Shown here: positions 32,849 through 64,000 of the stretch, one piece after another | How the letters are laid out: each line of letters starts with the position of its first letter | Numbering within the stretch: position 1 is the first letter of the stretch | Assembly (NCBI GenBank): GCA_044892525.1 | Contig: CM097886.1 | Span: 44,950,001-45,014,000 of the forward strand | DNA from: Schmidtea polychroa | Lineage: Eukaryota | Direction of reading: 5' to 3' | DNA length: 64,000 nt | Made by a program: the position numbers and the translations under genes | The notes under the pieces: generated by a model | The model's database searches: none | What the model was told of the DNA's origin: nothing | Seen by the model: the letters and a program-made list of their open reading frames with translations, nothing else

Positions 32849-33774
32849 TGTTGGGTTATTGAGTTGGTGATAAATTTAAATGTTACTCTGACTCCAAGCG
32901 TGTCTTTGACTGATCCACAAATAACACTTGACAACAGAAATCTTTATTGATAATCACAAATAACTTTCACTTTACACTGACAATAAATTCAACACTTGGG
33001 CTTGGTGACTATACAAGGCTTATTACAACACTCAGTGAGGAACAGCACTTGCGTATAACACCGGATTAAAAGATCACAAATTACTGATTTATCAACTGGG
33101 ACTTTGAGCTGGTTGTTTTCTTTGACCTTCACAAGTTTATTCAAATAATCAAGTAACTTCTTTTCGTTTTATTTTTCAGCTAATTCTTTTATTCAAATCT
33201 TTTCCAACAATTATTCTTCACAATTATTTTCTTTACAATTTTTTTTCACAATCGTTTCTCCAACAACGTTTCGTCCAACGTTGTCTAATTTTTCTCCAAT
33301 AATTTTATCTCTCAAATCGTCTCACAAATTGTCTCTACCAAATTGTCTTAATTTCACGTCAGTTTTTGTCTCTAATTTTGGGCTCATTTTGTCTCTACTA
33401 GTTTCTCTTTATATAGTTTGCTTCTATTGTGGCACTCAAAATAATCAAGTGTTTTACCACTTTTTTCTCCTGCTTTCCCCATCTGTTCCATTTTTATCTC
33501 CGACGGCTGTCAAGCTATTTTCCCTCTTTCCTTTTTTGTTTAACCGCCTTCTCCCAGCAATTACGTTATCACTGGCAGGCTGTTGAGATAAGAATATTGT
33601 TGTTTTCTTTTTTCCCGATTCCAAAATTCCTTTTTGTACTAATTAATTAGTACTGACCTTAGTTTTGATTTTCATGTTTGATTTCTTTTGTTTCTCTCCT
33701 CTTTCTCATTTCTCATTTCTTTCTTTCCGCTTTCTTTTCTGAGTTCCCGTAGATCGTCCCGTTTATCGTGGCGA
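32849..33774 (-). mobile_element. LTR relic, family B, copy 2, preceded by a G-rich polypurine tract
   Basis: Homologous ends to 28456-29092. On the minus strand GGGGGGGGGGGTGAAGA (33775-33791) lies immediately upstream of TCGCCACGATAAACGGGACG. Confidence 0.6.
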
Positions 33775-36760: not shown

Positions 36761-38483
36761 TATAAAAATTATCATTGTTGATTTTTTTTTGTTTTATTTT
36801 AGGTGTCGTTTTTTTAAAAATCAGTTACCGATATTATTATCGTGTTATTAGTACTGGGTGGTTTGTACTTGGTTCTTACTACTTGGTTGCTGGTACCTAA
36901 TTGTTGGTACTTATTTATTAGTACCTGATGAATGGTNNNNNNNNNNNNNNNNNNNNNNNNNNNNNNNNNNNNNNNNNNNNNNNNNNNNNNNNNNNNNNNN
37001 NNNNNNNNNNNNNNNNNNNNNNNNNNNNNNNNNNNNNNNNNNNNNNNNNNNNNNNNNNNNNNNNNNNNNNNNNNNNNNNNNNNNNNNNNNNNNNNNNNNN
37101 NNNNNNNNNNNNNNNNNNNNNNNNNNNNNNNNNNNNNNNNNNNNNNNNNNNNNNNNNNNNNNNNNNNNNNNNNNNNNNNNNNNNNNNNNNNNNNNNNNNN
37201 NNNNNNNNNNNNNNNNNNNNNNNNNNNNNNATTCATTCAAATTTGCTTAAAAATTTACCTTAAAAGTTGTCTTTGTAAATTATTGCATTAAAATTTTCAT
37301 TACTTCTTAAAATTTGTCACAAGACATCGTTTCATAAAGATATGTTACTTTTAAAAATTATTTTATCTTACTTATTTAAAAATTATTACATATTTTCTTT
37401 AATTTCTCAGAAGACATCGATTCTTCAATGTATCTTACCATAAATGCCTGTACAAAAATCCTGGAACCAAAATACCTTTTCACTATAGTGCTTCAGATTG
37501 ACATAAAACATATTGGCTCTCTACACCTTAGTTCATTTTAATCTGAAAATCTTTAGCCTAAAATAACCCCTCCCTATAATGCTTCACATTGACATAGGGA
37601 GGGGGTTTCATCGGATGGCCTTGCTGCAGTGTCCGAATATTACTACCAATTATTATTCGGATCATAATTTTGACGAAGTTCAAGTTGAGTATCAAACAAA
37701 AGAACGATTATTTTTATAAGATTATTGAACAATTACCAAACGTTGTGCAAATGTATATTTTTTCATGGTGAATTGTTAAAGTGTACAATAAACAAAAGAT
37801 AATTAGTGATATTTATAAAATTGTAAAAATGGTTGCTATGACATTTTAAAATTATATATCGTCCCTATTTAAAAGCTCTTTATTATATGATAAATGTACA
37901 TTGTGTGAAACTCATTTGATATTAATATTATTCTTTTTAACGCCAACAGTATATTTTATTAATAGTAGTAATAAAATATAAATATACAAGAGAACTAGAG
38001 ATTATACGAATAAAATTTTCAACCAAAACTCGTGTCAAATCTAATTCATATAGTTGTCCTTTAGCATCTGGATATTACTGTAGAATTCATTTCGTTTATT
38101 AATGATCTTTTCACTGAATGAATTATGTACATATATAGATATATTTGTAGCATTATATTTACATGTCAACATCATCAACAGGTTTTAGGTTAGATCCCTA
38201 AAAGTACATCATGATAGAAGTGTAATAAATTTATCATACAAATGGCTTATAGACTTCTTTAAGATCATTTACTACCTCATAGATTTTATGTACGTAATCA
38301 GCTCTATAAATAAACCTATTAAATTTAATTTAATTTCGTAAATCGTAAACCTTTCACGGCTTAGGTTTTCTTTTGACATTTGGACATTCTTTTCATTGTC
38401 TTTCATACGATCTTTCTTTAAAGTGAGTTTCTGTTGAAAACTTTAACAATTTGAAAATCAAGAATCGATTCGAAAAGTTAAAT

Positions 38484-38840
38484 GATGTATTGGATGATAA
38501 TTATATTATTGGATGATAATTATATTATTGGATATAATTATATTATTTTTAAACAAGGTTACGTGGCGCCTTGTCGTTTCGTTTGGGTTAGGCAGTGTTC
38601 GAAAATTTGAATAAAAACCTATATAGCGATAATTTACCTTAGTAAATTCATAAAAAAAACTAAGATAATTCTTAAATTTGCGAATCTAAAGTTTCAATAC
38701 TAATCAAGAAGATTCGAGTTCTAATACCAGGATAATTCTTAAATTTGCGAATCTAAAGTTTCAAAACTAATTAAGAAGATCCAAGTTCTAATACCAAAAA
38801 TTCAGATTTTAATATAAATTAGAAGATTCAAGTTCTAATA
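38484..38840. repeat. Short tandem repeats (~20-nt unit x3 at 38484-38545; ~67-nt unit x2-3 at 38660-38840)
   Basis: ATTGGATGATAATTATATT repeated; GATAATTCTTAAATTTGCGAATCTAAAGTTTCAA..AAGAAGAT..AGTTCTAATA repeated. Confidence 0.75.
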
Positions 38841-39579
38841 AAGAAAAAGCCAATCTTAAATATACATCGAAAAGTATTTTTATCATAAAACGAAACAAGA
38901 TCCTAAGAAAATTTAAATCATAACTCAATTACAATTACTTACAATTATAGATAAACCTATCCCCAATTATAAGGTGCTTATTTTTATTATAAATAAAAGT
39001 TGTTGTTGATTAAGTTATTTATTATTAATATTTTTAATTATGGTAAGTATTGTAACTTGTAAACCCAGCAAACATTCGCTAGTAACATACACATACCCCG
39101 ATTGTCCCGCCACACTTTTTTATCGGTGACTCTATCGGGTCCTTCATATCTCTTTTACATAAATTAACAAGACATAAATTAANNNNNNNNNNNNNNNNNN
39201 NNNNNNNNNNNNNNNNNNNNNNNNNNNNNNNNNNNNNNNNNNNNNNNNNNNNNNNNNNNNNNNNNNNNNNNNNNNNNNNNNNNNNNNNNNNNNNNNNNNN
39301 NNNNNNNNNNNNNNNGCTTGTACATAATATTGTAACTGAAGATACAATTTTATATGCACACCAAAAAGTTGGACATCTTTAATTTTTAAAATATTATTTT
39401 TGGATTTTGACCATTCATAAAAACTTTCAAAATGACTCTTGCAATACCCTTGATTGCCTTGTATCACCACAATAAGTATTCGGCTATCCTAAGAAAAACC
39501 CTTCAAAACGAATTATTGATCGCCAAAATACTTGGTCAGTAACTTTCAATAATCAACTTTGAATTAGCGGGCCCCTACT

Positions 39580-43290: not shown

Positions 43291-45813
43291 CACTAGGACG
43301 GCCAGAGCGGTCATTTTGACCGTTAAGCAATTTCATTTTTATTTTGTGAGAAAACGAAAAGGAATTAACGTCTCATATTTTGTGACAATTATTCATTTTT
43401 AGTGAACTTGTTGTGCATATCAAAGCTTCAATTATAGCATTTGTCACGACTGACATAATGAGGCCATCCCCATGGAAGGCCGAACCGGTCAATTTGACCG
43501 GTATCTTGAAACACACAAGAAAGTCACACATAATCATCTTACATACTAGAAAATATAAAACCAAATATAATTTACACACAACCGAAGCATTTAACAGTCA
43601 TTTGGGAATGTTTTCCACAGTAAACTTTACTACATACATGGCATATAGCTCCGGATTTGTTATCACAATGAGGAGCAGTACAAGTTTTTCGCTTCTTTAA
43701 TTTTGGTTGTTCAGAACAGAGTTCACCAGAGATGGGACTTGCTGTTCGACGGCTTTTGAACTCCTCACAAAGAGATGTAGCTAATTCAAAAATAAAATCC
43801 CTTCTTTTTATAGTTGATCCCGTAGCATCTTTGAAAATAACATGAGCGTTGAGAGCTGCTTTATCAAGCAAATCATAGAAAGTAGCGACTGGCCATCTTG
43901 CTGTTGCGGCTTTACTGCTGTATAAACGCAACATGCTATCCGTGGTATCTACAGCTGTCTTATTTTTGTTATAAAAGTGTATCATTTCAGGCTTTCTCTT
44001 TTCGTCAGATCTCACACTAGCAGTAGAATGGAATGTTGACATGACAATGACTTTCTTGTCCGATTTGCCTTGATAGGAAACAGTGACAGTGTTTTGACAC
44101 GATAAATGAGTCGATTCAAAAGAGGCTTTTTCTCCAAGTGAGCTAATGATAAAAAGCGTGAATTTAATTTTACAGTACCAACCAATGTTGTTCGATTTAC
44201 AAGGAGATGTTCAGCTAGTGAGAGACTTGTAAAGAAATTGTCAGTGCAGACATTGTATCCTTTATTGAAAAATGGCTCCATTAGTTTCCTGACTACAAAA
44301 TCACCCAGCCGTAATCCACAGCGTTCGTTTCTATCGTGAGCCCCTAAATATGGCATTTGATTGATGACAAATTTGGTTTTGACATCACTGAGAATCCAGT
44401 ATTTGATACCGAATTTATCAGGCTTATTTGGCATAAATTGGATGAAGCAACACCTATTTTTTAGCGGCAAAAGTTGCTCGTCGACAGTAAGGAAGGGATT
44501 AGGAGTATAAACTTGAAGACAGTTTGAAACAAAAGTCAAATATTTCACGAAAATGGGCATATTTATCTTGTTCTACTCTTTGACGTCGAGAACATTGTTC
44601 ATCAAAACGAAGAAAGCGCAGTATCTCACGGAAACGGTTCCGAGACATGACTTCTCTGAAGTAAGGAGATCCAAATTGAGATGACCAGATTGAATTGATA
44701 GAATGTCGGCGAAAGCCTAACACACCACGGAGATACAGCAATCCAAGAAAAGCATCTAATTCTTGTAGACTGATACACCAGTCTGACGAAGCTTCTTTTC
44801 CTTTCATAATTGTGTATTTTTGAATTAACTTCAGCATTCCCTCAGAGACTATCAAGCGCCAAGCGCTCAGGGGTGAGTCAATTTTGCGCTTTGCAAAAGC
44901 TTTCACACCAGGTGTTCCACTAAAAATATTGTGCGCAGGGAATCTGCCAACACTAATAGCGTGATTGTTTTCTACTCGATTCCAAAGAGTGCCATTCCTG
45001 CTAGATAAAAGCTGATTTTCTAATGAAGAAATTGAGCTATTGACTGACTCATTGTCACTTTCTAACGAACTTCCATTATCATCAGAGTTCCATTCATGTA
45101 ACTCTTCGTCAGAATCATTTCTTTCGGGCTCATCATCACTTCCCATAGGCTGATCTTCATCTTCGGAGAGAGCAGCGTCAATATTCCATAGCTTCTGTAA
45201 AGCACGTTGAGCAGCAATTCTTTTAGTTGGCATATTTGATTCTAAAATAATGATAAAAACTCCGTCAGTAAAATAAGAAACGTCAAATTTATTATTGGAT
45301 TCTAATGAAAACACGGTTTTATAATGTTTGTTATCCCAAGAAGTTCAAAGATTTTCTATAATAATTATTAGATATTTTCTTATGACATTTCGTTAAGTTT
45401 TTCGTTTGATTCTTTTAATTTACCAAATTTCAAAACTTAGAACTCTTAATGCTTGCTTAATTACACTTTTAATAAGCACTATCTTTGAATAAAAGCAAGA
45501 GAATATTTATAAACAAGAAATGAAGTATACATACATACCAGTCTGAATAAACGCGAAGACAATGTTTAAAATAGTGTAGCTTTGTGTCAGCTAAACAAAT
45601 ATTTTTATTTCATTGTTGTAAGTAGTTTAATAAATTAACTACTGTTAGAATAAAAATAGTTAAATTTTGAAAGCGTGTTAGTAGCACAAAGAAAGTATTG
45701 CTGAATGAGTTGCATCATAGAAATCTCAGCATGAAAATAAGGAGCATATGTGCACCGGTCAAATTGACCGGTTTGGCCTTCCAAGGTATAAAATATTTCC
45801 GGCCGTCCTAGTG
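43291..45813 (-). mobile_element. piggyBac transposon (PGBD4-like), complete ends, frameshifted transposase
   Basis: TTAA|CACTAGGACGGCC .. GGCCGTCCTAGTG|TTAA. The transposase from ATG 45233 is split over ORFs 44499-45314, 44012-44560 and 43572-44042, with TVDEQL, TDNFFTS, VDTTD and a C-terminal Cys-rich domain. Confidence 0.95.
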
Positions 45814-49693: not shown

Positions 49694-51962
49694 CAGACAT
49701 TAAAATCATTATAATTACCGTTAATTCAACAACTACTATAGAACTAGCGATTCACAGCAACAGACACTGACTTACAGGATCATCACAAGGACTATTCCAA
49801 GACTCAAGAAACTTCATCTAAATCTATATTCGATTCTAGTATTAATTAATTCTACTTAGTACTTTTCGACTCAGCCTATTTGAAACACTCGGTAAGGATT
49901 TTTGGATTTCTTATTTTGAATTTATAAGTAATGGTATAATCTAATTATAATTTAAATTTAAAGATCTTACCTTTTCTTTTCGTTTGATTTCAAGCATGTT
50001 ATTTAATTTAATGATATGGTTATTTAATAATAAATGATTTACTTTCTAGGAATTATTGATTTTCCTTTGATGAATTATTTTTATGAGTTATTATTATGTT
50101 AATTAAATTTTTGAGGAACGTGGCGTTGAGATACTCTATGTCATGGTGTGAGGTGCCTTCGGGAGCTCCACCGGTGGACATAGGGTATTTGAATCACGCA
50201 GCTAGATTGGGCCGAAATGTGAGGGCTTCTTCACGGGTCCAATCGCTGAAGGTGCGACCAAAATCTATAGGCAAATTGTGGCAGAAAATTGATAGTCAGA
50301 TAGTGATTGAAAACAAAGATATGTAATAAATGAATCGGAGGATTCTTAGGTATTCGCGCAGTGATTGAGGGCGTCACACCATCGTCTCCAGATATCGTTT
50401 CCACTAAGCCAAATTTTCTCTATCATCGATGTAAGTTGTGTGTCAAACAATCGTTCGGACATTAGTGGGGCTATATGTGATATATCTTCGATGTTCATGC
50501 TTGCGCTCGGAACCTATTCCTACAAATTTTCGGCCTATGACCTTTTGAACTGTTATTTCTTTCATCTAAAAGTTCTCTTGAAGACATAGTCGCAAGGAAG
50601 CTCAAAGTAGATTGCTTCAGATAATTATTAGGATTATTCAAAATGACTGTTTACGAATAGATTGTAGAACCACGTAAAATGATTTATTTCAGATAATTAT
50701 TAGAATTTCATAAAACGAGTTTGTTCCAAATAAAATTTTTAATTACATAAAATAATTTACTTCAATTAATTTTTTAGAATTATATAAAAATATTTACTTC
50801 AACCAATTTTCATAATTACATAAATGATTGGCATCAAATAATTCGAAATGAAAAATGCAACTAAGTCGAGCCAAGAAAAATATGTATATTTTTTTTTAGT
50901 TAGCCTGATGAGTCTTGTTACTTAAATGTAAAATTCCCGTATTTCATGAAGTTGGAAATCCAGCGGGATAGGTAGAAAATCTCCAGAATTTCAGGAACAG
51001 ATCGATAAATCGCATTTGAGAGGTTAAAAAGAAATCCACCCTTGGAGCAAATTATATCCAACATTTACGACATAGAGAATCGTAATTTCTTCCAATGTTT
51101 CCGTGAGAATTATTAGGCCATCAGCAGGTGCAGGGGAATTGTGAGCAATTACGCAGTAGATAGTAACCAGAGAATATGCCAGCATGCAAACATTGAAGAA
51201 CCTCCATTAGTAGTTACGAGTAGAGATAAGTGTGTGAAGTCGCAACTCGCATGCGTCACACATGTTCAAACACACTATAGCAGCCAATCGCAGGGTGTAA
51301 AGTTACACTAACCTTTACTCATAGAAAATCAGGCCGAACGTGTCAGATGGAGTTTTCCGTTATCTAATTAAACCACTGACCGGCATTAGATTTCATCGCT
51401 CGGGATGGATAGTCAACCATCAGGCTGATATTTTGCTTATCTACTTAGTAGGATTTGCTCTGCTACTTTCTCACATCGATACAATTTTCCGTTATCACAA
51501 ATAAATAATCAAAAAATTAAATAACTTTCCGTTCATCATAAACGAACTATTTAAAGGAAATTATGGACCTCCCTTTACCGTAAGTACTTAATCGACCCCG
51601 GTACATGATACACGCATCGAAATCACTCATTTGGGGGGAAAAATCAACAATTTCACTCGATTCTCTGCAAACGTGAATTAGTGACTTCAAGCGGATTAAA
51701 TAAATAATAATTTTCATCGACCGAGAATTTCTCTCACTAGTGGTAATGTCTCCCTTTCCTTGTGCGAAATCTGGCTTGATCGATTTATCTTCTTATAATT
51801 AAAGACCCAAAAGGTATGAGGATCCATCGTGCAGTAGAATCTTGTTGACCGGTAAACCCATAATTTTGTCTATGATCAGTAGAGTATGAGTGTGGTCAGA
51901 TGGCGACACTCTCGTTGTTTTAATCTATTTTCATTTTTCATTTTTCTTCACAGTCACTCAAA

Positions 51963-52706
51963 ATGTTGCCCAATTCCACAACCATTCTCAGACCTTGTTT
52001 TTCTTGCTCCGACAAGAATTCGATCATCAAAGATCTCCAGGCCCAAATCGGGAAGTATAAAAGAAAAATAGATGAGTTAGAGGGGACATGGTTTAGTCCC
52101 ACCCGGATGAAGGAGGCTCAGAAGAAGCTGCACCGAAGCGAGCACTGTCGAGACGCGTTAATTTCGGAGAGTCGGGCGCAGAGGAGCCTAATAAAAGAGC
52201 AGTCGGAGGCGCTACACAAATTATACGTCCAGGCAGCAACTACAAGGAAGATCGCGAAGATCCCAATTAATGAAGCCAGTAATCTTTTCCCAGCACATCA
52301 TGATATCTCTGGCGGGTCTTCATCTCCAGTCGGAAAGTCCTGCCATGGGTGCGTGGAGACCGAGCTCTCTCCCAGAAGTCAAGACGTCGTATTCACCGGA
52401 ACTAGTAAGGTACCGTCAAGCACCGCATCTTCCTCAAGAGTGCAAATACCGACCGCTTCAAAACCTAAACGTCGGCAATTGTCACGCGCCGAACGAAAAC
52501 GAAAGCAACGCGAGCGGGCTTCCGTCAAACAGATTTTACCATCAATCGCCACCCCAGTCGAGGGCAGCAGTAATTCAGCAGTCGTCGATCTAACAACCGG
52601 AATCTCAGGGCGAGTCATCTCCGCTACCGGGGTGTCATGGGAAGAAAATGCCGCCGAATTCTTCGATTTAAACGAGTTACTCGCCGACTCGGAGTGGGAA
52701 AAATGA
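51963..52706 (+). CDS. LTR-encoded 247-aa protein: CxxC + coiled coil, basic NLS-like tract, acidic-aromatic C-terminus (transactivator-like)
   Basis: Acceptor TTTTTCTTCACAG ends 10 nt before the ATG; KPKRRQLSRAERKRKQRER; WEENAAEFFDLNELLADSEWEK; AATAAA at 52842. A homolog exists at 4620-5268. Confidence 0.75.
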   Translation: MLPNSTTILRPCFSCSDKNSIIKDLQAQIGKYKRKIDELEGTWFSPTRMKEAQKKLHRSEHCRDALISESRAQRSLIKEQSEALHKLYVQAATTRKIAKIPINEASNLFPAHHDISGGSSSPVGKSCHGCVETELSPRSQDVVFTGTSKVPSSTASSSRVQIPTASKPKRRQLSRAERKRKQRERASVKQILPSIATPVEGSSNSAVVDLTTGISGRVISATGVSWEENAAEFFDLNELLADSEWEK

Positions 52707-53294: not shown

Positions 53295-53601
53295 CTAGAT
53301 TGAAATTTCCATTGACTAGTGCGAACTTGACTGGGATTTATTATTGAAATTTTGTCGAATAGTGTGAATTCACCGGGATTAGTGATTTTAATTGACTGGC
53401 GAATGCAAATTGACTAATGCTTATCGAGTCTTATTATAAAATCACGAGTAGAAAATAATAAAATTAATGATATAAATAAAGTAACTTTAATAATGGAGAA
53501 ATAAGACAAAAGTAAAATAAATTATAACGATTTAAAAGGAGAATGTTTGATGAAACAACCACTAATTAGTTATATATTACTGAAACATTTTTTATATAGA
53601 C

Positions 53602-54087
53602 ATGACGAAATTCGGGGACCAGATACAACAATTAATCAACTTCATAAATATCGAGAATGACTCCCTTAAAACGCTGACACAAAAGAGAGAAAGAATTAAC
53701 ATCATACTACTCCAATCAATCGGACAAACACCAGTCGTCCCCAACCACATGTTATTAGCCACAGGACTAAGTCACCCAGATGGGAAGGTAAACCCGGAAA
53801 CCGTGTATCAATGGTATCAAGAGAGATTGAACCACCCAGCATTAAATCTTGATTATCAACGTATAAAAGACCCCTTAAATACCATATCAGATACAATCGA
53901 GCGGAAAATACAAGAAAAACTGACTCTACTACGAACTTGTTTTGCTTGTAAACTTCGTCCTATTCGCGTACTGTTTTTGCCGTGTGGACACCTCAGTCAC
54001 TGCGAAGAATGTGTGAACGATTTAAAACGATGTACGGTATGTAGGCATGAGATAAAAGAAACTCATATGGTTTATTATGGTGAATAA
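53602..54087 (+). CDS. 161-aa protein with a C-terminal IAP/MIB/MYLIP-type C3HC4 RING (putative E3 ligase), inside the retroelement leader
   Basis: CFAC-x11-CGH-x3-CEEC-x6-CTVCR..I..THMVYYGE. Acceptor TTTTTTATATAG is 2 nt before the ATG; AATAAA signals at ~54084, ~54147 and ~54205. No BIR motif. Confidence 0.88.
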   Translation: MTKFGDQIQQLINFINIENDSLKTLTQKRERINIILLQSIGQTPVVPNHMLLATGLSHPDGKVNPETVYQWYQERLNHPALNLDYQRIKDPLNTISDTIERKIQEKLTLLRTCFACKLRPIRVLFLPCGHLSHCEECVNDLKRCTVCRHEIKETHMVYYGE

Positions 54088-54652
54088 AACTGTTACAGAT
54101 ACAATAACATCTATGAACATCAAATTGATACTGACAATTGAATGAGAATAAATGTAATTGTTGTGTGAAATTTTATTAAAGTTTTAATTTTTATTTCTAT
54201 GACGAATAAATTTTTGTTGTGAACTGAGTAATTTATGGCTTTTAATTTTATTTTATAACTTTGTTTTGGAATCAAGCGAAAAGAAAACCGAAATAACGTG
54301 GAATTAGTCCCAATATAGGCTGTAAGGGTACAAACCGAGCCACCTTAGGGCGGTACGTTCTATCATACGATAAAACCAATTGGGAGGGGATAACCGATCA
54401 ACCTAAGTGAGGAGCGTAGGGCGGGGTACCATCGCAAATGATGAGAAGTTTCTGCGGCATGACTGATCACCATGCCAATGTAGAAATGGATCATCGCGAT
54501 CGTCGTGCGTTGTGAGCAAGGGGAGAAAGGGGAAAACACTCCCAAGCGGTAAAGATTAAGTCGACAAATTAAAAGTAGACAGAGAAAATAGTAATCTTGA
54601 GTAAAAGAAGAGAAGAGAAGTAGAAGCATGCAGAGTAAGGAATGTTAAAGCC

Positions 54653-54799
54653 GAGCTGTAAAATAGCCCAGCCGGTCAAGGAAAACGAAAACTGAGCTGT
54701 GAAAAGTCCAGCCAGTTCGGAGATATTAAGATCGAGTTGTTGAATAGTCCAACCGGTCAGAAGGAAGAAGATTGAGCTGTTGAATAGTGCCAGCCAGTC
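54653..54799 (+). repeat. Four-unit 40-41-nt direct repeat array
   Basis: GAGYTGT.(.)AA.AG..CCARCCRGTY at 54653, 54694, 54734 and 54774, separated by 15-16-nt purine-rich spacers. Confidence 0.85.
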
Positions 54800-56169
54800 G
54801 TAAAGGCCTAGAAAAGCGAGAGATAGCAGTTAAGCTACAATGAGCTAATATCTGAATTAATAGAGAAAGGGAATATTAAAGCTAGCTAGAAACAAATTGA
54901 ATGTAATTACGAAAATTGGAGTTTAGAGAGGAAATAAACGAGCTCGTGGAAAAGATAATAAGATTATAATGAAAAAGGAAAGGGAAGAAGGAAACGAATT
55001 AAAGAGATAATGGAAAATAAAGAATAGGCGAAACGATGATAATGAGTAAAGAGGAAAGTAACCAACTAATTAAAGGGATCCCAGTGAAGTAGAGAAACTC
55101 TACGGAATATTTTTTTTTTGGTTAAACCGGGAAAATGCATTTTATTGGTTCCAGAGTAGAACCGAGTGGAATAATAGTAAATATGAAAAGTAAAATAGCG
55201 ACAACAGCGCAAAAGGATTAGGAAAATGAAAGGGGGGTAATAAGCAGTGACCGACAACGACCTATTCATATTATAAGTGATAAAAATAGATAATTATTGC
55301 GACTCTATAGATAATTGTTACTACCCCATATAGATAATTTAAAATCGACGAAAAATTCGGGCTGATGGGAGATTATAACCCGCGGAAGTAATTGCATAAA
55401 AAATAGGGGAAGCATAAACAGAACCTAAAAGGTGTCTGTGTTTGAATGTTGCAGAAAGAATGATGAAGTCGTGTAAGCAGATGCAACACGAGATCATTTT
55501 TTCATTTTAGATATCAAACCAATCCAGTCAACCAAGACAATCCAGAACCTGCACAAAAGGAATTCGAAGAAATCGACAATCGACCAAGAATAAATCCATT
55601 CAGAACCCGCACCGAGAGACACAGCAACCGGAAGACTCCAGAACGGAAGAAGATACAGATAGCGACATCTCCAACTTCGAACGAATCATCGATATATTCA
55701 ACCTCATAGTATTAGCAGCCATCTGTCAAGGACTAGTAAATCTCCTCAGAATCCCAGTAGCAGATTCATACAGAATACTTATCGAAGGAAACACAATCAG
55801 AACCGAACTCGTCCAATTCAGTAGCCGCTAATTACCAAGAAGCGTAAGAAAGGAATCACGGATAAACCCAATCTTAGATCTTCAAGTAAGCCAGGAGACG
55901 TATTATTTTCAGGAGACGAATTACAACAACTCAAAAGAGGACGATCTATTAAACATCAAAGAGGAATATCACAAGGATCAAGAAGAACCAATCAAGTACC
56001 TATATTTGACCAAGAAAATCTCGGATACACCCCTAGTCGATCTCGAAGCAGAGAAAGTCTGTCCGACATCACTAATAGTTTAGCAACGTCAACCGAGGAA
56101 TTATCAGCCCAAAGTTTAGTCACATCGTTAGACAATTTGAAAGAAACAGACGAATCTAGAACACCAATC

Positions 56170-57594
56170 ATGACGAATGTCGTAAAAACCGACGAGTATA
56201 AAGAGAAGTTCAGAGGAGAACCGTTCAACGGAAATGCAAACAAGTTAGCAACGTTCATAACCAACTTCGAAGTTTATATCGATGTGTGCGGATGGACATC
56301 CGAAGCAGTTAGTAAAAGGATGCCGTTGTTTTTGTGCGATAGCGCATTAGAAGTGTATTTAGAGGCTAAAGAAAGAAATACGAAATTAGATAAATGGGAC
56401 GATATCAAAACATTCCTGAAGAAAACTTTCGGAGCTAGCAAACCAATAAATCAAGCACTCGGCGAACTAGCAAATAGGAAACAAAGAGCAAATGAATCCA
56501 TTACGTTATATGCCAGCGAATTGCGGAGATTGGCAAAGAAAGCAATGAATGGGAAATTACCAGAAGAAAATTTGATCGGTTATTTCATAGAGGGATTACG
56601 CCGAGAAGAAGTAAGAGCATCTGTAGGCTGTCAGATGTGTACAACGTTAGAAGAGGCCATAGATTGGGCTACGAGGTGCGAACTCCACCTCCCAGCACAA
56701 ATGAACATCATGCAAGAGGATGGGAGGATAGCGACAGCCAAAGTAAAAACGGATAATGGAGATAATAACAACCAGGAACCAAAAATGAATCAATTCATAC
56801 CAGGAGCGCATCAAATTTTTAAACCACCACAAGGACGATCAAATGGGAATAATGGTAATCGTAACAACCTGAATAATGAGAACAATTTTAATAATTGACG
56901 AAATATGAACGATAACAAGCAGTGCCGAACATGCGGTAAACCAGGACACTGGGACAGAGATTGCTATAGAAATTCAAATTGTAATCGTTGCGGACGGCGT
57001 GGACATACCGAAAATGTATGCCAATTGCGAGGTTGTTTTAACTGTGGTCAGCCAGGTCACATCTCCAGAGATTGCCGAGAAAGGGGTCAACAACAACGAC
57101 CACCACAGCGAAATAATAATTATATGGCGAATCCGCAACGACAAAGTAACCCTAGCGAAGGAAACCAAATGAACGTTATGCAGGAAATCTCGCAGATGAA
57201 ACAGATGATGCAACAAATGATGAGACCAAGACCAGAATCAGCACCACAACAAACCCAGAATATACGTATGATGAGGAGTACCGAAAATCTCAACAATTAT
57301 GAAGTACATCAACATGTACAAGAATGGCAAAGACTGCAGGCCGAGGAAGAGAGGATAAAACAAGAACGCAACCAACAACGCCAAGAACAACCATTGCGAA
57401 TAAATATGATGAAGTTAGTAAAAGACCTGAAAAGCCAGTATTGCTACAATTACGGGAAAAACCCAAGGGTAGTACCCATGACGGAACCAGAAAAGGTAAA
57501 AGAAACAACAACGGAAATGAAAACAGAATTCAACCACGATTTTAAAAGGAAACCAGAGAATTCAGAAAATATTCTGGAAAAAGATAAAAGATAA
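56170..57594 (+). CDS. gag: Gag: capsid (56170-56898) and nucleocapsid with three CX2CX4HX4C knuckles (56923-~57077), interrupted by one in-frame TGA at 56896
   Basis: PFNGNANKLATFITNFE..W..F..KQRANESITLYASELRRLA..FIEGL; CRTCGKPGHWDRDC, CNRCGRRGHTENVC and CFNCGQPGHISRDC. Both parts are in frame 1. Confidence 0.9.
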
Positions 57595-58360
57595 AATAGA
57601 AAAGAAACATGAAGAAACGGAAATAAGAATAAAAGAGGGAAACAACCAAAACAAGGAGCAAATCAGTCAGTTAAACCACCAAATGCTACAAGAATCGGAA
57701 TCAGAAGAAACAACGATATTCGAAAATAGAAAACTAAAGAGAGTACCTAGGATGAGAAATTTGCGAATCAACATGATGAAAAGGACAAAAGGTACGTCGT
57801 CCTCAGACGAAGACTATGTGAGCAGTTTGGGTGGAGAAATACTACAGCTAAACGAAATAAGCGAACCTCCGAAAGGGGAAATCAAAGAGGAAGAAAGCGA
57901 AAGCGAGATAACCAGTGGAAGTGAAGACGAGGATATCGAAATAAAGTTGAGAAAAGCAAGGGAGGAAGCGATAAAACAGGTAGCCGAAATACTCCCGGTG
58001 GTAGTGAGAAACCAAGAGTTCATCGATGTAATACCATTCAGGCGATTCGTACAAAAAGTGATGAAATTGGAAGGAAACGAGAAAGATTTAATACCAAACG
58101 AGGAAAAATCAATTATAAAAAAGTATATGGAAAAAATGAAGCAGGCCGATACCACGCGGTATGTAATAAAAATCAGAACGAGCAGAGGACTTGAAAGAAT
58201 GTGGATCAAAAGTACAGTCACCGACGAACTTTTCGATTGGATACGAGAACATTTGGGAAGTTCGAGAAAGAAAGAATATCTGTATCAATACCAAGGAGAA
58301 CAGATCAAACCAGATATGCACTTAGTGGGAAATGTAGTGATGGTATGGTGGATGATGTAG
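57521..58360 (+). CDS. Polyprotein segment in frame 2 (acidic region + ubiquitin-like C-terminus), linking gag to the long frame
   Basis: Open from 57521 to the TAG at 58358. Repeats the LRINMMK heptapeptide of the upstream frame. Ends YVIKIRTSRGLERMWIKSTVTDELFDWIREHL..YQYQGEQIKPDMHL. Confidence 0.7.
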   Translation, partial: KQNSTTILKGNQRIQKIFWKKIKDKIEKKHEETEIRIKEGNNQNKEQISQLNHQMLQESESEETTIFENRKLKRVPRMRNLRINMMKRTKGTSSSDEDYVSSLGGEILQLNEISEPPKGEIKEEESESEITSGSEDEDIEIKLRKAREEAIKQVAEILPVVVRNQEFIDVIPFRRFVQKVMKLEGNEKDLIPNEEKSIIKKYMEKMKQADTTRYVIKIRTSRGLERMWIKSTVTDELFDWIREHLGSSRKKEYLYQYQGEQIKPDMHLVGNVVMVWWMM

Positions 58361-61300
58361 TCATGATGTACGATAAAATAATATTACGAGCGGAAGACGA
58401 CACCTCGTTAAGCGAAATGGGTATGTGGGACAATCATCAGATAATCAGGATAGTACCAATGGATGAATTTCGAACAAGAGATATAACATATCAAAAAGAA
58501 ATACGAGACCGGATGAAAACGTTATATCAAAAATCTACAGAAATAATTGAAATCCACCAACAATGGTTAAAAGAAAAGGAACTACAAGGAAAAATCACGA
58601 AACTAAGTACCAGATCCTGCAGACGGACCCCATGGGAAAGAGTGTGGAATGCAGAAAATAAGGAATGGGAAATCCGGAAAGGAATCTTCGTAGAAACAGA
58701 CATTGGTGAGACAGAAAGTGAATCGGAGGAAGAAGAAGAGGAACCTCCAGAATATGAAGAGGAAGGAAGGGGACAGACATCAGATGACGAAAGCGAGACG
58801 GATGTCACATCAGAAAGCGAAAATGAAGCGAGACACATTCATGCAATGAGGAAAAAGGAACGTGAATATGCTGATATGGACGGCGAGGAAGCGACGGAAG
58901 CAAGAGAACGAGAAGAGAGAGAAAGATATAAACAATTAGGCGATATCCTAATAAAGGGAGCGAAGAATCAAAAACGACAAGTAATAACATTAGCTAACTT
59001 CATTTTAAAAATATCGGATAATATCCATTATCTGAGGGAGATAGTAAAAACTATAGAAGAATACCGACAATACAACGAATGGTACCCGGAACAACTGGAG
59101 CAAATTATCGGGAAGTGGCGAAACCATGAGTGGTCACAAGATACCCAAGAGAGATACCGAATCCGAATCAAATACCCAGATAAGAATGTTGAGGAAGTAG
59201 AAGTACACCCAACCATCAAAATCAGGGAATTAAAAAAGAAATTGGCATACGAAACTCCTTTCCATCTACAACTGCAAGGAAAATCACTAGACGATAATGC
59301 AGACGTCGGAATAACACCCATGAGATTGGAAGAGACAAATGTATTAACGATGGCAGAAACGTTGGGGAAACCATTAAAAAGGAAAAGTAAAAGTGACAAA
59401 CCGACAAAAGGCAGTTTGAGTACTCCAAGTCCGAACAAAGCCCCAAGTAAATCTAATGAAACTGAAGAAGTTGAAGAGATTATCCTCGAAGATAGTGACG
59501 ATGAACCAGGAGAAAGATCACCGCTATTAGTAAGATGGCCGACAGGAGCCGAAATGTGGACTAATAACCAGCCATCAACGAGTTATCAACAACCAACGAA
59601 ACTAAACATCAAAGAAATCATCGACAATACTACGGAAACCGAAACGGACGAACAATTCCTGAAGCAAAGAGAACCAACGAAAATAACACCAGAAGGTCAA
59701 ACGGATAAAATAATAGATGAATGGAACGAGTGGCTGAGAAATAACGATAGTTCATTACCCAGAACGGATAACGAAAGAAATCCGAATTACGAAAATACCA
59801 GAGAAGCCGGAACGATGATGGAAAAACGGGCAAAAGGAAGGCCTAAGAAACAAGGAGGAAAGTCTGAGTTCAAAACCAAGGAACAATTAAAGCAAGAACA
59901 AGGGCAAGTTCGATTGGAAAAATTGGATAAAATAGTATGGGATCTAAAGGAAGCCCAACCAACGGTTGAAAGAGGAGAAAAATGGATACGAGAATTGATA
60001 AAAGATATGTTAATAATAACAAACCCACAACTTAGACGCTTGTGGCAACGGAAAGTAGCGAGTGTGGAAGCTAGACAGTTATGGCACACCGTTTCGGGGA
60101 TAATCCCAAAGTTAATCAAAGAGAAAACGAAAACCACCAAAACGGATTGGGATGAAACGAAGAGAGTGATTGAACAGCTCACGACAAATGCAAATGATGA
60201 CGAACATCATCTAGTGGTAATCACTTATTTGACGTATAATTTGATGGGATTAGCGGCAAGAAAAATACCGAATAAACAGTTTGCAAATCACGTGGAAATG
60301 ACCGTTTCAATCATAGAGAATACTATTGAACCACATATTATTCGTGCCGGAGGATGGAAAAGACTTATACAAGCGCCACGAAAAAATGAGCAAGAAAGGT
60401 CGATGCAAGTTAGGTTGAAGAAGTTGTTGAATGAACTAGAATGGGAACTACCCATGAAAGACCCAGCAAGCCGAAAAGCATCGATAAATTCGTTAATGAT
60501 GACTATGATGATATGGATGTTGTGCACAAGTGGAGCAACGGGTTTTACCATCTACGATTGTGATAATATGATAATGAGAGATAAATACTCATTGAGAGAC
60601 ATAGAAGAATGCAGACAAGCATCACCCAACAAATTAGACATAGTAAGAACAAAAGTTACTTACCATGTATACCAAGAATCAGATTTCATTAGAACGCAAG
60701 CAAGGGAATGCGTGGTATCAAAAAAGGTACTCGCATATTACTGTGGACAATATTCGTATTCGACTCTTATACTACCCGGTCTGGATAAAGAAATCGTATC
60801 AATACAACGAGAGGACTGTAAAGAGCTATTTAGAACCGGAGCGCTAAAAATGCATAACGGAGTGACGATTCACGGACAAACTGGAATGATTAAAACCGAA
60901 AGCGTTTACGTATCCGGAAAAGTAAAATCATCAGATGGGTCATGTAACGGAGGTACGTATACGATCCGAGGCGAGGTAATATCGGGAGTAGTAGTAATCG
61001 AGTCCTATACGGTTGAACTAAAGGAATACGAAGCGCAATTTGACGCAAATAATTACCAAATGAAGACCAACCCAGCGTGTAGAGCTACAGAAAACGTATG
61101 CAGGACAGGAGTATCAACTATAATCTATGAAGCTAATACCCAAAAATGCCGACTCCAACTGTTAAAAAGTGCTTTGTTCAATGAAGTAAAAGGAGAAATT
61201 TATGAGAACGAGAACGACGAGGATGGAAACGACAGAGTGAGAATGCGAAATGGAAAACCAATGCCACCATCTCCCAGAGAAAAAAGACTCTCAACGCAGA

Positions 61301-64000
61301 AAACACCAACAGCGTTAATTACCGACGATCCAGATCTAGGTATGAGATTTATCAAAGAAAAAGAAACCACCAAATGCGACAGTATAGTATATAAAACCAA
61401 TTACGCTGGTATCTATATGTCGAGACAAATAATCGATAGAGCAGTGGGAAAGATAGCAACGGAGGACGTAAAACTATACTTATATGCAAATAATAAAATG
61501 GATTTTCTATTTCATCGTGGACAAACGACCTTGCAAAAAGTATATTACGATCTGATACAAAACGATTGTTCATTGAATAAAGAAATACTGAAAACAAAGC
61601 TAGCTATTGCGATAACACACCCAGATAACACGATGCCATCACTCCCATTACCAGATGGACATTTTGGTAGAATGGTAGGAGAAGTGATGTACACATACCA
61701 GTGTACCAAGACGTATGCACGAATGCCAGAAAAATCCATACTACCCGAAAAGAGATGTGCAAACGAATTAGAAATCCGTTATAAAGGACAAAATCGATTC
61801 GTCCAACCAGTCACGAGAATTATGAATCCAGTGGGTTTCTACCCAAATCTCTTTAACTGTTCTAATGCATACGGACCTTTGTATGAAAGACCCGATGGCA
61901 AATGGATGATGTTACCGGGAAAAACCATATCCGAGGAGCCCAAGAAATATGGATTAATAGAACTCGCCACAGAGCTGGATTTCAAACCTATAGACGTGTC
62001 AAACGGTGGTATGTATTCCCCAGAAGATCTAGAAACAGCACGACTTAACGTACTCTTCCCAGCCAGACGAGAATCCATTTTGTCAAATATGGTTACAATA
62101 ACTGGGGGAACAAATTATCAATCAGGCCCGAATTACGAACTGCTATTATCGCCAGACCATTTTCAACAAGCTACGTCAAACATGATGAAAGCCATGTGGG
62201 GAAGATTTTTAGTTTTTGGACAAATGATGGCCGGAATATTGGGGATCATACTCATAATTCAGATAGTCAGAGTAATACTAACACAAATGTTAGCTTGTTT
62301 TGATATATACAAGCGAGAAAAGAAAGTAAATTGGAAAATGATAGTAGGCTTTCTACCATTCCTAGCTAAAACCATGGTGTTACATGGTCACTCAAAGGAC
62401 ATTCACCGAATAAAACGATTAATTAAAATATTAACAAAGATTAAAGGAACCGACGAAGAAGTAGGCAGACGATTCCGGAAAGTAATGTACGATGAAGCAA
62501 CAAGACGACAATTGAAAAAGAATAAGCCAAAATTTTTGGACCGATTTAGAAGTCAATCATCTAACAGCAATAGTGACGACGATGATAACGGGAACGATAA
62601 ATGTATATATCCAAACAGAAACCCAAACGAAAAACCAATGGAAACAGCACCATATTGGGAGAAGGAAAAGACAAACACCTGGATCGCCAATGGAAGCTAT
62701 ATACCGCCAGATATCGTGGGACCACAAGCAGCTTTGACCATGACACAAAATATGTATCCGCAATTACCGAGTCAACCAGGTATGCATTATATGCCAACAC
62801 GACGTACCAAAAGTGTAGATCAAGCAGATGACGTAAGAACAATAGCAGCGATGAGTCTACCTGGAGGTCCAGCAGTAACAGTTATGATTCAAATCAATGG
62901 TAAAGAAACCAATGCTATGATAGACACCGGAGCTAATGTATCAGCGATAGCGATTAATCAAATTCCCAGTAAGCACTGGAAGGATATCGAATCAACAACA
63001 ATCCACATCATAGCATGTAGTAAAGAAACAGTAGACGTGGTCGGAAGATGGTGGACTACATTGAGATACCAGGACAACGAAATTGAAACGTATTTGGCAG
63101 TAATACCAAAACTTAGCGTACCATGCATAATCGGAACGGATCTGATGCCAGAATTATTAAAAGAAGTGGTAATAGACTTAACAACCATGTGTCTAAAGGA
63201 CAAAACCGGTAGAATATGCAAAATGAATGCAGTAATCAGATGTCCAGAAAAAATAATAGTACCAGCGAAATCGCAGATGATTTGTCAGATAAAGGTGGAT
63301 ACGGGTATGGAAGGAGAAGTTATCTTTGAACCAAGCAAGTCATTCGAAAAGCGACGAGAGTTACCACTCGCAAGGGAAATAATCACAATAAACCAAGAAG
63401 GAGTGATACCGCTCAACATCACGAATTTCGAAGAGGAAGACAAAATCATTTATGAGAACGAAAAATTGGGAAGATTGACCCCAATGATGGACATAGAATT
63501 ACCGAAAGTGACCAACGAGATGATCAAAGATGATGAATTATGGACAATAGATAGTATGTTGTTGACGAATGATGAAAAGAAAAAATTGCACCGATTGTTG
63601 GTAGAATATAAAGATATATTCGCCATCTCAGATTTAGATTTGGGTACATGCGATGTTACCCTACATGCAATACCACTCATAGATGAAACTCCAATTGCAC
63701 TAAGACCATACAAGCTAGCAGAAATGCAAAAAGAAATAGCCGAAGCAGAAGTACAAAAGATGCTAGACGCAAAAGTAATCGAACCGAGTTGCTCACCCTG
63801 GCAATTCCCAGTGGTCATGGTAAAAAAGAAAGATGGCACCCAACGATTCTGTATCGATTATCGGAAGTTAAACGCAGTAACCAAGAGAGATACCTATCCA
63901 TTGCCGGACATCAATGAGATGTTATTGATATTGCAAGGGGCAGCATATTTTACTTCTTTAGATCTAAAAAGTGGATACTGGCAGATTAAAGTCAAAGATG
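58195..64000 (+). CDS. pol: Long polyprotein frame (~1935 codons, no stop in window): Ubl domains, Bcl-2-like domain, signal peptide, Env-like glycoprotein, protease, RT (partial)
   Basis: Frame 1 was translated by hand from after TGA 58192-58194 to the window end with no stop; first ATG is at 58345. It is absent from the supplied ORF track, presumably because it lacks a stop. Confidence 0.92.
59980..60372 (+). other. Bcl-2-fold-like domain within the polyprotein
   Basis: RELIKDML ~ Bcl-xL BH4 RELVVDFL; KRVIEQL ~ EQVVNEL; a hydrophobic alpha5 LVVITYLTYNLMGL; IEPHIIRAGGW ~ BH2 LEPWIQENGGW. The NWGR motif is not conserved. Confidence 0.6.
60484..62385 (+). other. env: Chuvirus-like / class III (gB-type) envelope glycoprotein domain with internal signal peptide and TM
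   Basis: Hydrophobic SLMMTMMIWMLCTSGATG then FTIYDC, YYCGQYS, GEVMYTYQC, CANELEIRYKGQNRFVQPVTRI, GGMYSPEDL, LFPARRESIL and TM WGRFLVFGQMMAGILGIILIIQIV. REKR at 61276. Confidence 0.85.
62854..63200 (+). other. Retropepsin aspartic protease domain
   Basis: INGKETNAMIDTGANVSAI (DTG at 62923) and CIIGTDL. Confidence 0.92.
63560..64000 (+). other. Reverse transcriptase N-terminal part (Gypsy type)
   Basis: PIALRPY..EVQKMLDAKVIEPSCSPWQFPVVMVKKKDGTQRFCIDYRKLNAVTKRDTYPLP..SLDLKSGYWQI. Confidence 0.95.

What the first reader, a model, noticed from the sequence alone, without database searches (positions are those of the whole stretch)
59980..60372. Bcl-2-like domain encoded by a retrotransposon
Seen: the segment WIRELIKDML..RQLWHTVSGII..WDETKRVIEQL..HHLVVITYLTYNLMGLAARK..FANHVEMTVSIIENTIEPHIIRAGGWKRLIQ. 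It follows the BH4 / alpha2 / alpha4 / hydrophobic alpha5 / alpha6-BH2 order and spacing of Bcl-xL (RELVVDFL, QVVNEL, WGRIVAFFSF, LEPWIQENGGW). BH1 NWGR and the BH3 GD are lost, as in many divergent poxviral Bcl-2-fold proteins. Knowledge: vBcl-2s are known from large DNA viruses; I know of none in an LTR retroelement. Inference: anti-apoptotic or immune-modulating function protecting the host cell during replication.
Basis: inference. Interest (0 to 1): 0.9.

Follow-up and report, generated by a model that had tools for sequence, protein, structure and literature searches.

The report
Helical module before a retroelement's envelope gene
The flagged 131 residues are real, conserved, all-helical coding sequence lying just before the envelope protein of an endogenous retrovirus-like element, but their likeness to the cell-death regulator Bcl-2 stays below every significance threshold and cannot yet be confirmed or excluded.

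Summary
All quoted peptides are at 59980-60372 (+), inside an uninterrupted frame of more than 1,900 codons that runs to the window's end.

That frame belongs to a Ty3/gypsy-type endogenous retrovirus with the known non-canonical order gag - env - pol:
- Gag capsid and three CCHC knuckles
- a long linker
- the flagged helical module
- a signal peptide and a Monjiviricetes-type fusion glycoprotein (Pfam E 5e-70)
- protease and reverse transcriptase

The Bcl-2 reading is neither confirmed nor refuted.

For it:
- Pfam PF00452 matches at 15-16 bits (E 0.018-0.04; cutoff 31.4), ending on the GGW.
- Foldseek on a 144-residue AlphaFold model puts Bcl-2-family chains at the top of both the PDB and the viral library.

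Against it:
- Those Foldseek hits have E 0.5-2.4, TM 0.2-0.3 and rmsd 13-15 A, on a model with pLDDT 46.
- Ribosomal_L17 scores as well as Bcl-2 on the same residues.
- Control pieces of the same protein reach E 0.02-0.06.
- phmmer against 1.84 billion proteins and against the PDB finds no Bcl-2 relative.
- BH1 and BH3 are absent.
- The only relatives found lack the half that carries the match.

My best reading is a lineage-specific cytosolic helical module preceding the Env signal peptide (about 0.4). A true divergent Bcl-2 fold is about 0.22.

The parts
54270..55824 (+). Probable 5' end of the element (LTR and leader). Bounds are approximate.
   Evidence: GC and A-over-T skew rise here, after the neighbouring gene's stop and an AT-rich tail. 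No second LTR lies in the window to confirm it.
55825..63999 (+). Polyprotein gene of the element: gag - linker - helical module - env - protease - RT. It is cut by the window's end. It is broken three times (one in-frame stop, two frameshifts), all upstream of the finding. The first ATG of the gag frame is at 56170.
   Evidence: Pfam domains in order on one strand. Comparison with the continuous relative P0004. Open frames.
56320..56604 (+). Gag capsid domain (Retrotrans_gag PF03732; also a weak Ty3_capsid match)
   Evidence: E 6.8e-12; coordinates.
56923..57075 (+). Three CCHC zinc knuckles (nucleocapsid)
   Evidence: zf-CCHC E 1.3e-11; motif scan.
59161..59307 (+). Weak ubiquitin-like (beta-grasp) segment in the linker
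   Evidence: Pfam ubiquitin E 0.02-0.035. In the PDB, ubiquitin variants at E 0.07 and GABARAP/Atg8 at about 1. Sub-threshold.
59824..59850 (+). Basic GRP-core motif (AT-hook-like), conserved in P0001 and P0004
   Evidence: Invariant columns in alignment A1; alignment. The AT-hook reading is my inference.
59890..60444 (+). All-helical module between a low-complexity linker and the Env signal peptide
   Evidence: AlphaFold secondary structure shows nine helices, at low confidence; hydropathy.
59980..60372 (+). The finding as flagged
59980..60144 (+). The best-conserved block of the whole linker. It has three invariant Trp and lies almost wholly outside the Pfam Bcl-2 match (the two overlap by three codons).
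   Evidence: 73% identity to P0004 over 55 residues, against 28-44% elsewhere in the linker; invariant columns.
60136..60357 (+). Sub-threshold match to Pfam Bcl-2 (PF00452, profile columns 27/28-100). It ends on the Trp of GGW.
   Evidence: 15-16 bits, E 0.018-0.041, cutoff 31.4.
60232..62670 (+). Stretch with no counterpart in relative P0004. It covers the last 47 residues of the finding plus the whole env.
   Evidence: BLASTP and tblastn of P0004 against the window; P0004 sequence.
60454..60540 (+). Predicted Env start and signal peptide: basic n-region, hydrophobic core, small residues at -3 and -1
   Evidence: Hydropathy peak; sequence. The cleavage site is my inference from the -3/-1 rule.
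60493..62313 (+). Fusion glycoprotein (Pfam Monjiviricetes_fusion PF24664). The ectodomain has 14 Cys.
   Evidence: E 5.5e-70 to 3.2e-71, profile columns 3-208 and 244-579 of 653; Cys count.
62224..62301 (+). Env transmembrane anchor
   Evidence: Strongest hydropathy peak of the frame, 2.53.
62881..63156 (+). Retroviral aspartyl protease (RVP PF00077)
   Evidence: E 1.5e-09.
63820..63996 (+). Start of reverse transcriptase (RVT_1), cut by the window's end
   Evidence: E 1.1e-06, profile columns 1-85 of 205.
53584..54084 (+). Neighbour: the last coding exon of a host gene, ending in a C3HC4_3 RING finger. Not part of the element.
   Evidence: E 6.8e-12; translation.

Best explanation
The segment is the core of a lineage-specific, all-alpha module of an endogenous retrovirus-like element (Ty3/gypsy type, gene order gag - env - pol). 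It is not a demonstrable Bcl-2 homologue.

Shown: in this copy gag-linker, module, env, protease and RT share one reading frame, with no stop between the module and env or between env and protease. The module ends about 30 residues before the Env start and signal peptide.

Inferred mechanism: when the polyprotein, or an Env precursor with a long leader, is made, the internal signal peptide inserts into the ER membrane. The glycoprotein ectodomain goes into the lumen. The helical module stays on the cytosolic face, held at the membrane by the hydrophobic core of the signal peptide. There it would act as a membrane-proximal leader or adaptor that keeps the Gag side next to Env. This is comparable in layout to the cytoplasmic domain of the foamy-virus Env leader peptide. 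Its first 55 residues, with three invariant tryptophans, are the constrained part. On this reading the Bcl-2-like helix spacing and the GGW in the last 73 residues are chance.
For: Domain order and the single open frame.
Signal-peptide-like segment directly after the module, and a strong transmembrane anchor later.
Conservation peaks in the first 55 residues (73% against 28-44% in the linker). That block lies almost wholly outside the Pfam Bcl-2 match.
The Bcl-2 signals are all sub-threshold and matched by noise: L17 on the same residues; controls; Imm9 at E 0.023 on P0001.
No Bcl-2 relative by phmmer in 1.84 billion representatives or in the PDB.
The gag - env - pol order with a class III Env is described for nematode, bryozoan and flatworm Ty3/gypsy elements (PMC13524379).
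Single polyproteins that include Env are described for nematode elements (PMC9094657).
The foamy-virus Env leader has a cytoplasmic domain of about 60 residues that binds Gag through tryptophans (PMC7828637).
Against: The adaptor role is an analogy only.
- No Gag-binding evidence exists.
- The conserved tryptophans are 13-20 residues apart, not a WxxW pair.
- P0004 keeps the conserved block although it has no env.
- Bcl-2-family proteins do head both Foldseek lists, and the Pfam match spans 73 profile columns in 73 residues without net gaps. A pure-chance view has to absorb both.
- Both structure models are of low confidence, so the fold is simply unknown.
- Whether the product is one polyprotein or a spliced Env mRNA is not known.
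Confidence: 0.4

Rival explanations
1. A true, highly divergent Bcl-2-fold domain, captured long ago from a host or a DNA virus. It has lost BH1 (NWGR) and BH3 and keeps the alpha4-alpha8 spacing and the BH2 GGW. After signal-peptidase cleavage the Env signal peptide could serve as its C-terminal membrane anchor, giving the topology of a tail-anchored cellular Bcl-2. It would damp cell death in cells where the element is active.
For: PF00452 is first or second among the Pfam hits in six different cuts. It always ends on the GGW Trp, with 73 columns in 73 residues.
The AlphaFold secondary structure of the 144-residue cut has eight helices of 13, 10, 21, 16, 22, 17, 7 and 5 residues. The last five resemble alpha4-alpha8 as I know them, with GGW between the last two (the comparison is from my knowledge).
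Foldseek gives about 38 Bcl-2-family chains in the PDB top 50. In the viral library 4 of the top 5 and 8 of the top 50 are vBcl-2, E1B-19K or an adintovirus Bcl2.
A hydrophobic segment follows 44 residues after GGW.
The same linker may hold another host-like module, the ubiquitin-like segment.
Against: Every score is below significance: 16 bits against a 31.4 cutoff; Foldseek E 0.5-2.4, TM 0.2-0.3, rmsd 13-15 A, on a pLDDT-46 model.
The Pfam and Foldseek signals share the same amino-acid signal and the same single family, so they are not independent.
The 191-residue model gave no Bcl-2 hit.
L17 and control pieces score alike.
No Bcl-2 chain reaches E 10 in the PDB by phmmer, and none was found in 1.84 billion representatives.
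BH1 and BH3 motifs are absent by reading.
The best-conserved block lies almost wholly outside the match, and the relatives lack the matched half.
Confidence: 0.22
2. A passive spacer. The segment only has to stay open so that translation runs from the linker into env. Its helices and the GGW carry no function of their own.
For: Much of the surrounding linker is low-complexity and poorly conserved at 28-44%. No family match reaches threshold. P0004 does without the second half.
Against: 73% identity over the first 55 residues, well above the linker and above gag (54%). The segment is predicted helical throughout rather than disordered.
Confidence: 0.2
3. Two modules of different origin that merely abut. 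The first 84 residues would belong to the old gag-pol linker. The last 47 residues would have arrived with the captured glycoprotein gene as its upstream leader. On this reading the 'domain' is a chimera.
For: P0004 follows the window up to residue 84 of the finding, then continues with the stretch just before the protease. It therefore lacks exactly the rest of the finding plus env. P0001 ends at the same residue.
Against: P0001, P0003 and P0004 are one 90% cluster, so this is a single event. It may be a deletion derivative with an arbitrary end point, or a gene-model intron. No DNA of these relatives could be fetched. The Pfam glycoprotein profile begins at the signal peptide, not upstream of it.
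Confidence: 0.12
4. The conservation reflects an RNA signal (packaging, splicing or export) that overlaps the coding sequence, rather than the protein.
For: Only the sharp conservation peak of the first 165 bases.
Against: Six overlapping 150-nt pieces fold no better than shuffles, with z from -0.85 to +0.78. There are no Rfam matches. Conservation was measured on protein only, since no relative's DNA was available.
Confidence: 0.05

Closest known systems
GAG-ENV-POL Ty3/gypsy 'errantiviruses' of Nematoda, Bryozoa and Platyhelminthes (PMC13524379), and the 'non-canonical nematode endogenous retroviruses' of Sacco et al. 2022 (J Gen Virol 103:1739). The latter I know only by its title and its citation there; the paper is not held.
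   Same: Ty3/gypsy Gag with CCHC knuckles, a class III-type fusion glycoprotein between gag and pol, then protease and RT. The glycoprotein is of negative-strand RNA-virus type (Pfam Monjiviricetes_fusion).
   Different: In this copy the linker, env and pol sit in one frame with no stop between them. About 1,000 codons separate the knuckles from env, including a weak ubiquitin-like segment and the flagged helical module. I could not check whether the published elements share these, because no sequences of them were at hand.
Bcl-2 family (Pfam PF00452) and viral Bcl-2 homologues of herpes-, adeno-, pox- and adintoviruses
   Same: All-alpha, about 140 residues, eight predicted helices, a hydrophobic central helix, GGW near the end, and a hydrophobic segment downstream. 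This is the top-ranked family in Pfam and Foldseek, at sub-threshold scores.
   Different: No significant sequence or structure match. BH1 NWGR and the BH3 motif are absent. The segment is embedded in a retroelement polyprotein rather than being a free gene. The downstream hydrophobic segment is the Env signal peptide.
Foamy-virus Env leader peptide (Elp/LP) (PMC7828637)
   Same: A sizeable cytosolic domain directly N-terminal to the hydrophobic ER-targeting segment of Env, with conserved tryptophans. It is a candidate Gag-Env link.
   Different: No sequence relation. Here the module is longer and helical, the tryptophans are not a WxxW pair, and the module is continuous with Gag in one frame. 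A signal-peptidase-type site follows the hydrophobic core.
Atlas virus and related nematode Belpaoviridae elements (PMC9094657)
   Same: Gag, Pol and an RNA-virus-derived Env are encoded as one polyprotein without stops.
   Different: A different retroelement family (BEL/Pao), Env at the C-terminus, and a class II (phlebovirus-like) fusogen.

Membership tests
Bcl-2 family (PF00452) | Profile match at or above Pfam's gathering score (31.4 bits) | tested here: not met
   14.9-16 bits, E 0.018-0.041 in six cuts. Ribosomal_L17 scores equally on the same residues. Controls reach E 0.02-0.06.
Bcl-2 family (PF00452) | BH1 motif (NWGR type) at the start of the central helix | tested here: not met
Read from the translation: no such motif before the hydrophobic helix.
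Bcl-2 family (PF00452) | BH3 motif (Leu, then Gly-Asp four residues on) in helix 2 | tested here: not met
   Absent from the translation.
Bcl-2 family (PF00452) | BH2 motif with GGW between helices 7 and 8 | tested here: met
   GGW at 60349-60357 aligns with the last profile columns. The upstream Trp of the canonical BH2 is not present.
Bcl-2 family (PF00452) | Globular bundle of about eight helices around a central hydrophobic hairpin | tested here: inconclusive
   Eight helices are predicted, but at pLDDT 46 and pTM 0.30. TM-score to Bcl-2 structures is 0.2-0.3 and rmsd 13-15 A. The 191-residue model (pLDDT 56) matched only helical repeats.
Bcl-2 family (PF00452) | Detectable pairwise similarity to some family member | tested here: not met
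   No Bcl-2 chain at E 10 or better in the PDB. No true hit in 1.84 billion representatives or in the word-indexed search.
Bcl-2 family (PF00452) | BH3-groove binding or anti-apoptotic activity | not testable with these tools
GAG-ENV-POL Ty3/gypsy endogenous retrovirus | Ty3/gypsy-type Gag with CCHC nucleocapsid | tested here: met
   PF03732 at E 6.8e-12; zf-CCHC at E 1.3e-11; three knuckles.
GAG-ENV-POL Ty3/gypsy endogenous retrovirus | Viral fusion glycoprotein with signal peptide and transmembrane anchor, placed between gag and pol | tested here: met
   PF24664 at E 5.5e-70; hydropathy peaks at the signal peptide and the anchor.
GAG-ENV-POL Ty3/gypsy endogenous retrovirus | Aspartyl protease followed by reverse transcriptase | tested here: met
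   RVP at E 1.5e-09; RVT_1 at E 1.1e-06, cut by the window's end.
GAG-ENV-POL Ty3/gypsy endogenous retrovirus | RNase H, integrase and two LTRs | not testable with these tools
   The window ends inside RT. No LTR pair lies within the window.
Foamy-virus-type Env leader peptide (analogy only) | N-terminal WxxW pair that binds Gag | tested here: not met
   The conserved Trp residues are 13-20 residues apart.

The most novel reading that the evidence does not exclude
A metazoan LTR retroelement carries a divergent Bcl-2-fold domain inside its Gag-Env-Pol polyprotein. The domain sits so that the Env signal peptide becomes its C-terminal membrane anchor after cleavage, which mimics a tail-anchored cellular Bcl-2. 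This would be the first Bcl-2-like protein known from a reverse-transcribing element. It would suggest that such elements manage cell death in the cells where they are active.
Probability: 0.2. Interest if true: 0.85.

Novelty: new member of a known kind. Interest (0 to 1): 0.4.

Why it matters
Viral Bcl-2 homologues are known from large DNA viruses. My literature searches found none reported from an LTR retroelement. A confirmed one would be a new way for a retroelement to deal with its host cell.

Even without that, the locus is useful. It shows a gag - env - pol element in which linker, a captured RNA-virus glycoprotein and pol lie in one frame. A conserved helical module sits exactly where the polyprotein must cross from the cytosol into the ER. 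That placement bears on how such elements make and assemble Env, and it can be examined by descriptive means: transcripts, peptides, structure, and distribution of the module among copies.

Tried and rejected
Searches that found nothing useful:
- Exhaustive phmmer of the 191-residue piece returned only a repetitive protein (P0002, nine stretches), which I rejected as spurious.
- Three word-indexed protein searches returned only P0001.
- Two metagenome scans and two viral-contig scans gave no related locus.
- Six exact look-ups of encoding contigs (P0001, P0003, P0004 and three window ORFs) were not on record. So I had no DNA of relatives, no dN/dS and no host identification.
- phmmer against the PDB for the module gave only AP-2 alpha, malate dehydrogenase, integrin and ribosomal S6 at E 0.3-1.8, which I rejected.
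- The env piece has no PDB sequence relative.
- Minus-strand ORFs over the finding have no family match.
- No stable RNA structure, Rfam family or tRNA was found.

Ideas considered and dropped:
- Splice model for the env-less form of P0004. Reading the window around the two junction points, I saw no donor and acceptor pair in compatible phase. Without P0004's DNA this stays open.
- A weak likeness (E 2.1) between the finding's last part and a P0004 segment upstream of its ubiquitin-like region. I treated it as chance.
- The RING-finger exon next to the element as an IAP-like partner. No BIR domain was found, and it looks like the end of a host gene.

Not possible: a profile-profile comparison with a Bcl-2 alignment, because no Bcl-2-family sequence came back as a usable hit and none may be typed.

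Slips I must declare:
(a) While recalling the layout of the Pfam profile, I wrote a stretch of a human Bcl-2-family sequence from memory in my private reasoning.
I also looked at those places in my reasoning. They are not repeated in this report.
Full report
1. The observation

The segment lies in a single frame that stays open for more than 1,900 codons up to the last base of the window. The stop frequency in the two other + frames is 0.079 per codon. By chance, 131 open codons would occur with probability about 2e-5 and the whole frame about 1e-69. This is translated sequence. Minus-strand ORFs across it match no family.

2. The surroundings

On the + strand Pfam finds, in order:
- a Ty3/gypsy Gag capsid domain (PF03732, E 6.8e-12)
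- CCHC zinc knuckles (E 1.3e-11; three by motif scan)
- a viral fusion glycoprotein, Monjiviricetes_fusion PF24664 (E 5.5e-70, profile columns 3-208 and 244-579 of 653)
- a retroviral aspartyl protease (E 1.5e-09)
- the start of RVT_1 (E 1.1e-06), cut by the window's end

The glycoprotein is preceded by a methionine, a basic stretch, a hydrophobic core and small residues at -3 and -1. I read this as a signal peptide. It is followed by the strongest hydrophobic peak of the frame, the membrane anchor.

The element is therefore an endogenous retrovirus-like Ty3/gypsy element with the order gag - env - pol. That order, with a class III-type Env, is described for Ty3/gypsy elements of nematodes, bryozoans and flatworms (PMC13524379). 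That paper cites Sacco et al. [quoted passage not shown] The cited paper itself is not held.

The copy in the window is broken three times, by one in-frame stop and two frameshifts. All three lie upstream of the finding, judged against the continuous relative P0004. From the linker through env into RT there is no stop.

The background is AT-rich (25-30% GC, against about 40% in the element). It carries a Na+/H+ exchanger gene, a piggyBac-like transposase remnant and a RING-finger exon. I could not identify the host. A nematode or flatworm is an inference from the literature above.

3. The segment itself

It is the core of an all-helical stretch (about 59890-60444). This stretch lies between a low-complexity linker and the Env signal peptide.

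The only relatives found anywhere are three UniParc/MetaClust proteins of one 90% cluster: P0001, P0003 and P0004. Against P0004:
- the first 55 residues of the finding are 73% identical
- the next 29 residues are 45% identical
- the rest of the linker is 28-44% identical
- gag is 54% identical

Three tryptophans in the block are invariant.

P0004 then passes directly to the stretch just before the protease. It lacks the last 47 residues of the finding and the whole env. P0001 ends at the same residue. This could be a deletion derivative, a gene-model intron or an older env-less state. I could not decide, because no DNA of these proteins is on record.

4. Testing the Bcl-2 reading

(a) Pfam. 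PF00452 matches in six different cuts at 14.9-16 bits, E 0.018-0.041. The match always covers profile columns 27/28-100 and ends on the Trp of GGW, with 73 columns in 73 residues. The gathering score is 31.4 bits. Ribosomal_L17, an unrelated fold, scores E 0.0076-0.08 on the same residues. Ten control pieces of 131 residues from domain-free parts of the same polyprotein gave best E-values of 0.02 (ubiquitin, possibly real), 0.033, 0.057 and 0.1 or worse. P0001 gave Imm9 at 0.023. The Pfam hit is therefore at the edge of noise.

(b) Pairwise searches. phmmer of the 191-residue piece against 1.84 billion representatives gave one spurious repeat protein. phmmer of three cuts against the PDB gave no Bcl-2 chain at E 10 or better. 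The word-indexed search gave nothing.

(c) Structure. No alignment could be built, so AlphaFold ran on single sequences.
- The 191-residue cut gave pLDDT 56, pTM 0.37 and nine helices. Its Foldseek hits were designed and natural helical repeats at E above 0.1.
- The 144-residue cut gave pLDDT 46, pTM 0.30 and eight helices.
- For the 144-residue model, Foldseek listed no hit at E 0.001 or better. About 38 of the top 50 PDB hits are Bcl-2-family chains (BFL-1, Bcl-xL, BAK, MCL-1, BAX, Bcl-2, A1), at E 0.5-2, TM 0.2-0.3 and rmsd 13-15 A.
- In the viral library, 4 of the top 5 and 8 of the top 50 hits are herpesviral vBcl-2s, adenoviral E1B-19K or an adintovirus Bcl2, at E 0.8-2.4.

The family enrichment is real as a ranking. 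But members of one family rise together, and the Foldseek score contains the same amino-acid signal as Pfam. It therefore counts as roughly one weak observation. The three-dimensional agreement is poor.

(d) Motifs. GGW is present. BH1 (NWGR type) and BH3 are absent.

(e) Conservation. The constrained block lies almost wholly outside the Pfam match, and the matched half is missing from the relatives.

5. Weighing

Neither is any confirmation threshold. I put a true Bcl-2 fold at about 0.22.

The reading I prefer, at about 0.4, is a lineage-specific helical module on the cytosolic side of the Env signal peptide. The layout is shown. The role is inferred. When the internal signal peptide inserts into the ER membrane, the module stays cytosolic and membrane-tethered. 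There it could link the Gag side to Env. This is comparable to the cytoplasmic domain of the foamy-virus Env leader peptide, which binds Gag through tryptophans (PMC7828637). Single polyproteins that include Env are known from nematode elements (PMC9094657).

Other rivals:
- a passive spacer (0.2), opposed by the 73% block
- a chimera of an old linker end and a leader that came with env (0.12)
- an overlapping RNA signal (0.05), opposed by fold z-scores of -0.85 to +0.78 and no Rfam match

6. Novelty and score

The element is a new member of a known kind. The module is uncharacterised. No Bcl-2-like protein of an LTR retroelement turned up in the literature search. Interest is 0.4. The Bcl-2 reading, if later confirmed, would deserve about 0.85.

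7. Declared slips

(a) In my private reasoning I wrote from memory a stretch of a human Bcl-2-family sequence.
They are not repeated here.

Noticed in passing
window 59161-59307 (+): The linker holds a weak ubiquitin-like (beta-grasp) segment. Pfam ubiquitin scores E 0.02-0.035. PDB ubiquitin variants score E 0.07 and GABARAP/Atg8 about 1. It lies in a stretch of about 180 residues that P0004 lacks at this position. P0004 seems to have a similar segment elsewhere in its linker.
   Followed up: partly
window 59824-59850 (+): A basic motif with a Gly-Arg-Pro core (AT-hook-like) about 45 residues before the finding. It is invariant in P0001 and P0004.
   Followed up: no
window 59890-63999 (+): Linker, env, protease and RT are in one frame, with no stop between the module and env or between the env tail and protease. 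A second, weaker hydrophobic segment follows the Env anchor. How Env is released from such a product is unexplained.
   Followed up: partly
window 60232-62670 (+) versus P0004: Relative P0004 (1602 aa) lacks this whole stretch, which is the end of the finding plus env. It joins the two flanks in frame. P0001 ends at the same residue. It is an env-less derivative or a gene-model intron; which one is undecided.
   Followed up: partly
window 53584-54084 (+), with 51924-52703 (+): Just upstream of the element there is a coding exon ending in a C3HC4_3 RING finger (E 6.8e-12) and a coiled-coil-like open stretch in GC-richer DNA. This is probably the 3' end of a host gene. This RING subtype also occurs in IAPs, but no BIR domain was seen.
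   Followed up: partly
window 43575-45344 (-): A piggyBac-type transposase (DDE_Tnp_1_7) spread over three overlapping frames, so broken by at least two frameshifts.
   Followed up: no
window 19169-26035 (-): Exons of a Na+/H+ exchanger gene (PF00999, E 6.6e-23 and 9e-10), separated by AT-rich introns.
   Followed up: no
window 28961-29057 and 33644-33740: A 97-nt direct repeat pair, 79% identical and 4.7 kb apart, flanking a GC-richer stretch with an open frame of 316 codons that has no Pfam match. It is possibly another mobile element.
   Followed up: no
window 38656-38789: Two tandem copies of a 67-nt unit (90% identical), next to an assembly gap.
   Followed up: no
window 442-676, 36937-37230, 39183-39315: Runs of N (assembly gaps or masking). 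Left as they are.
   Followed up: no
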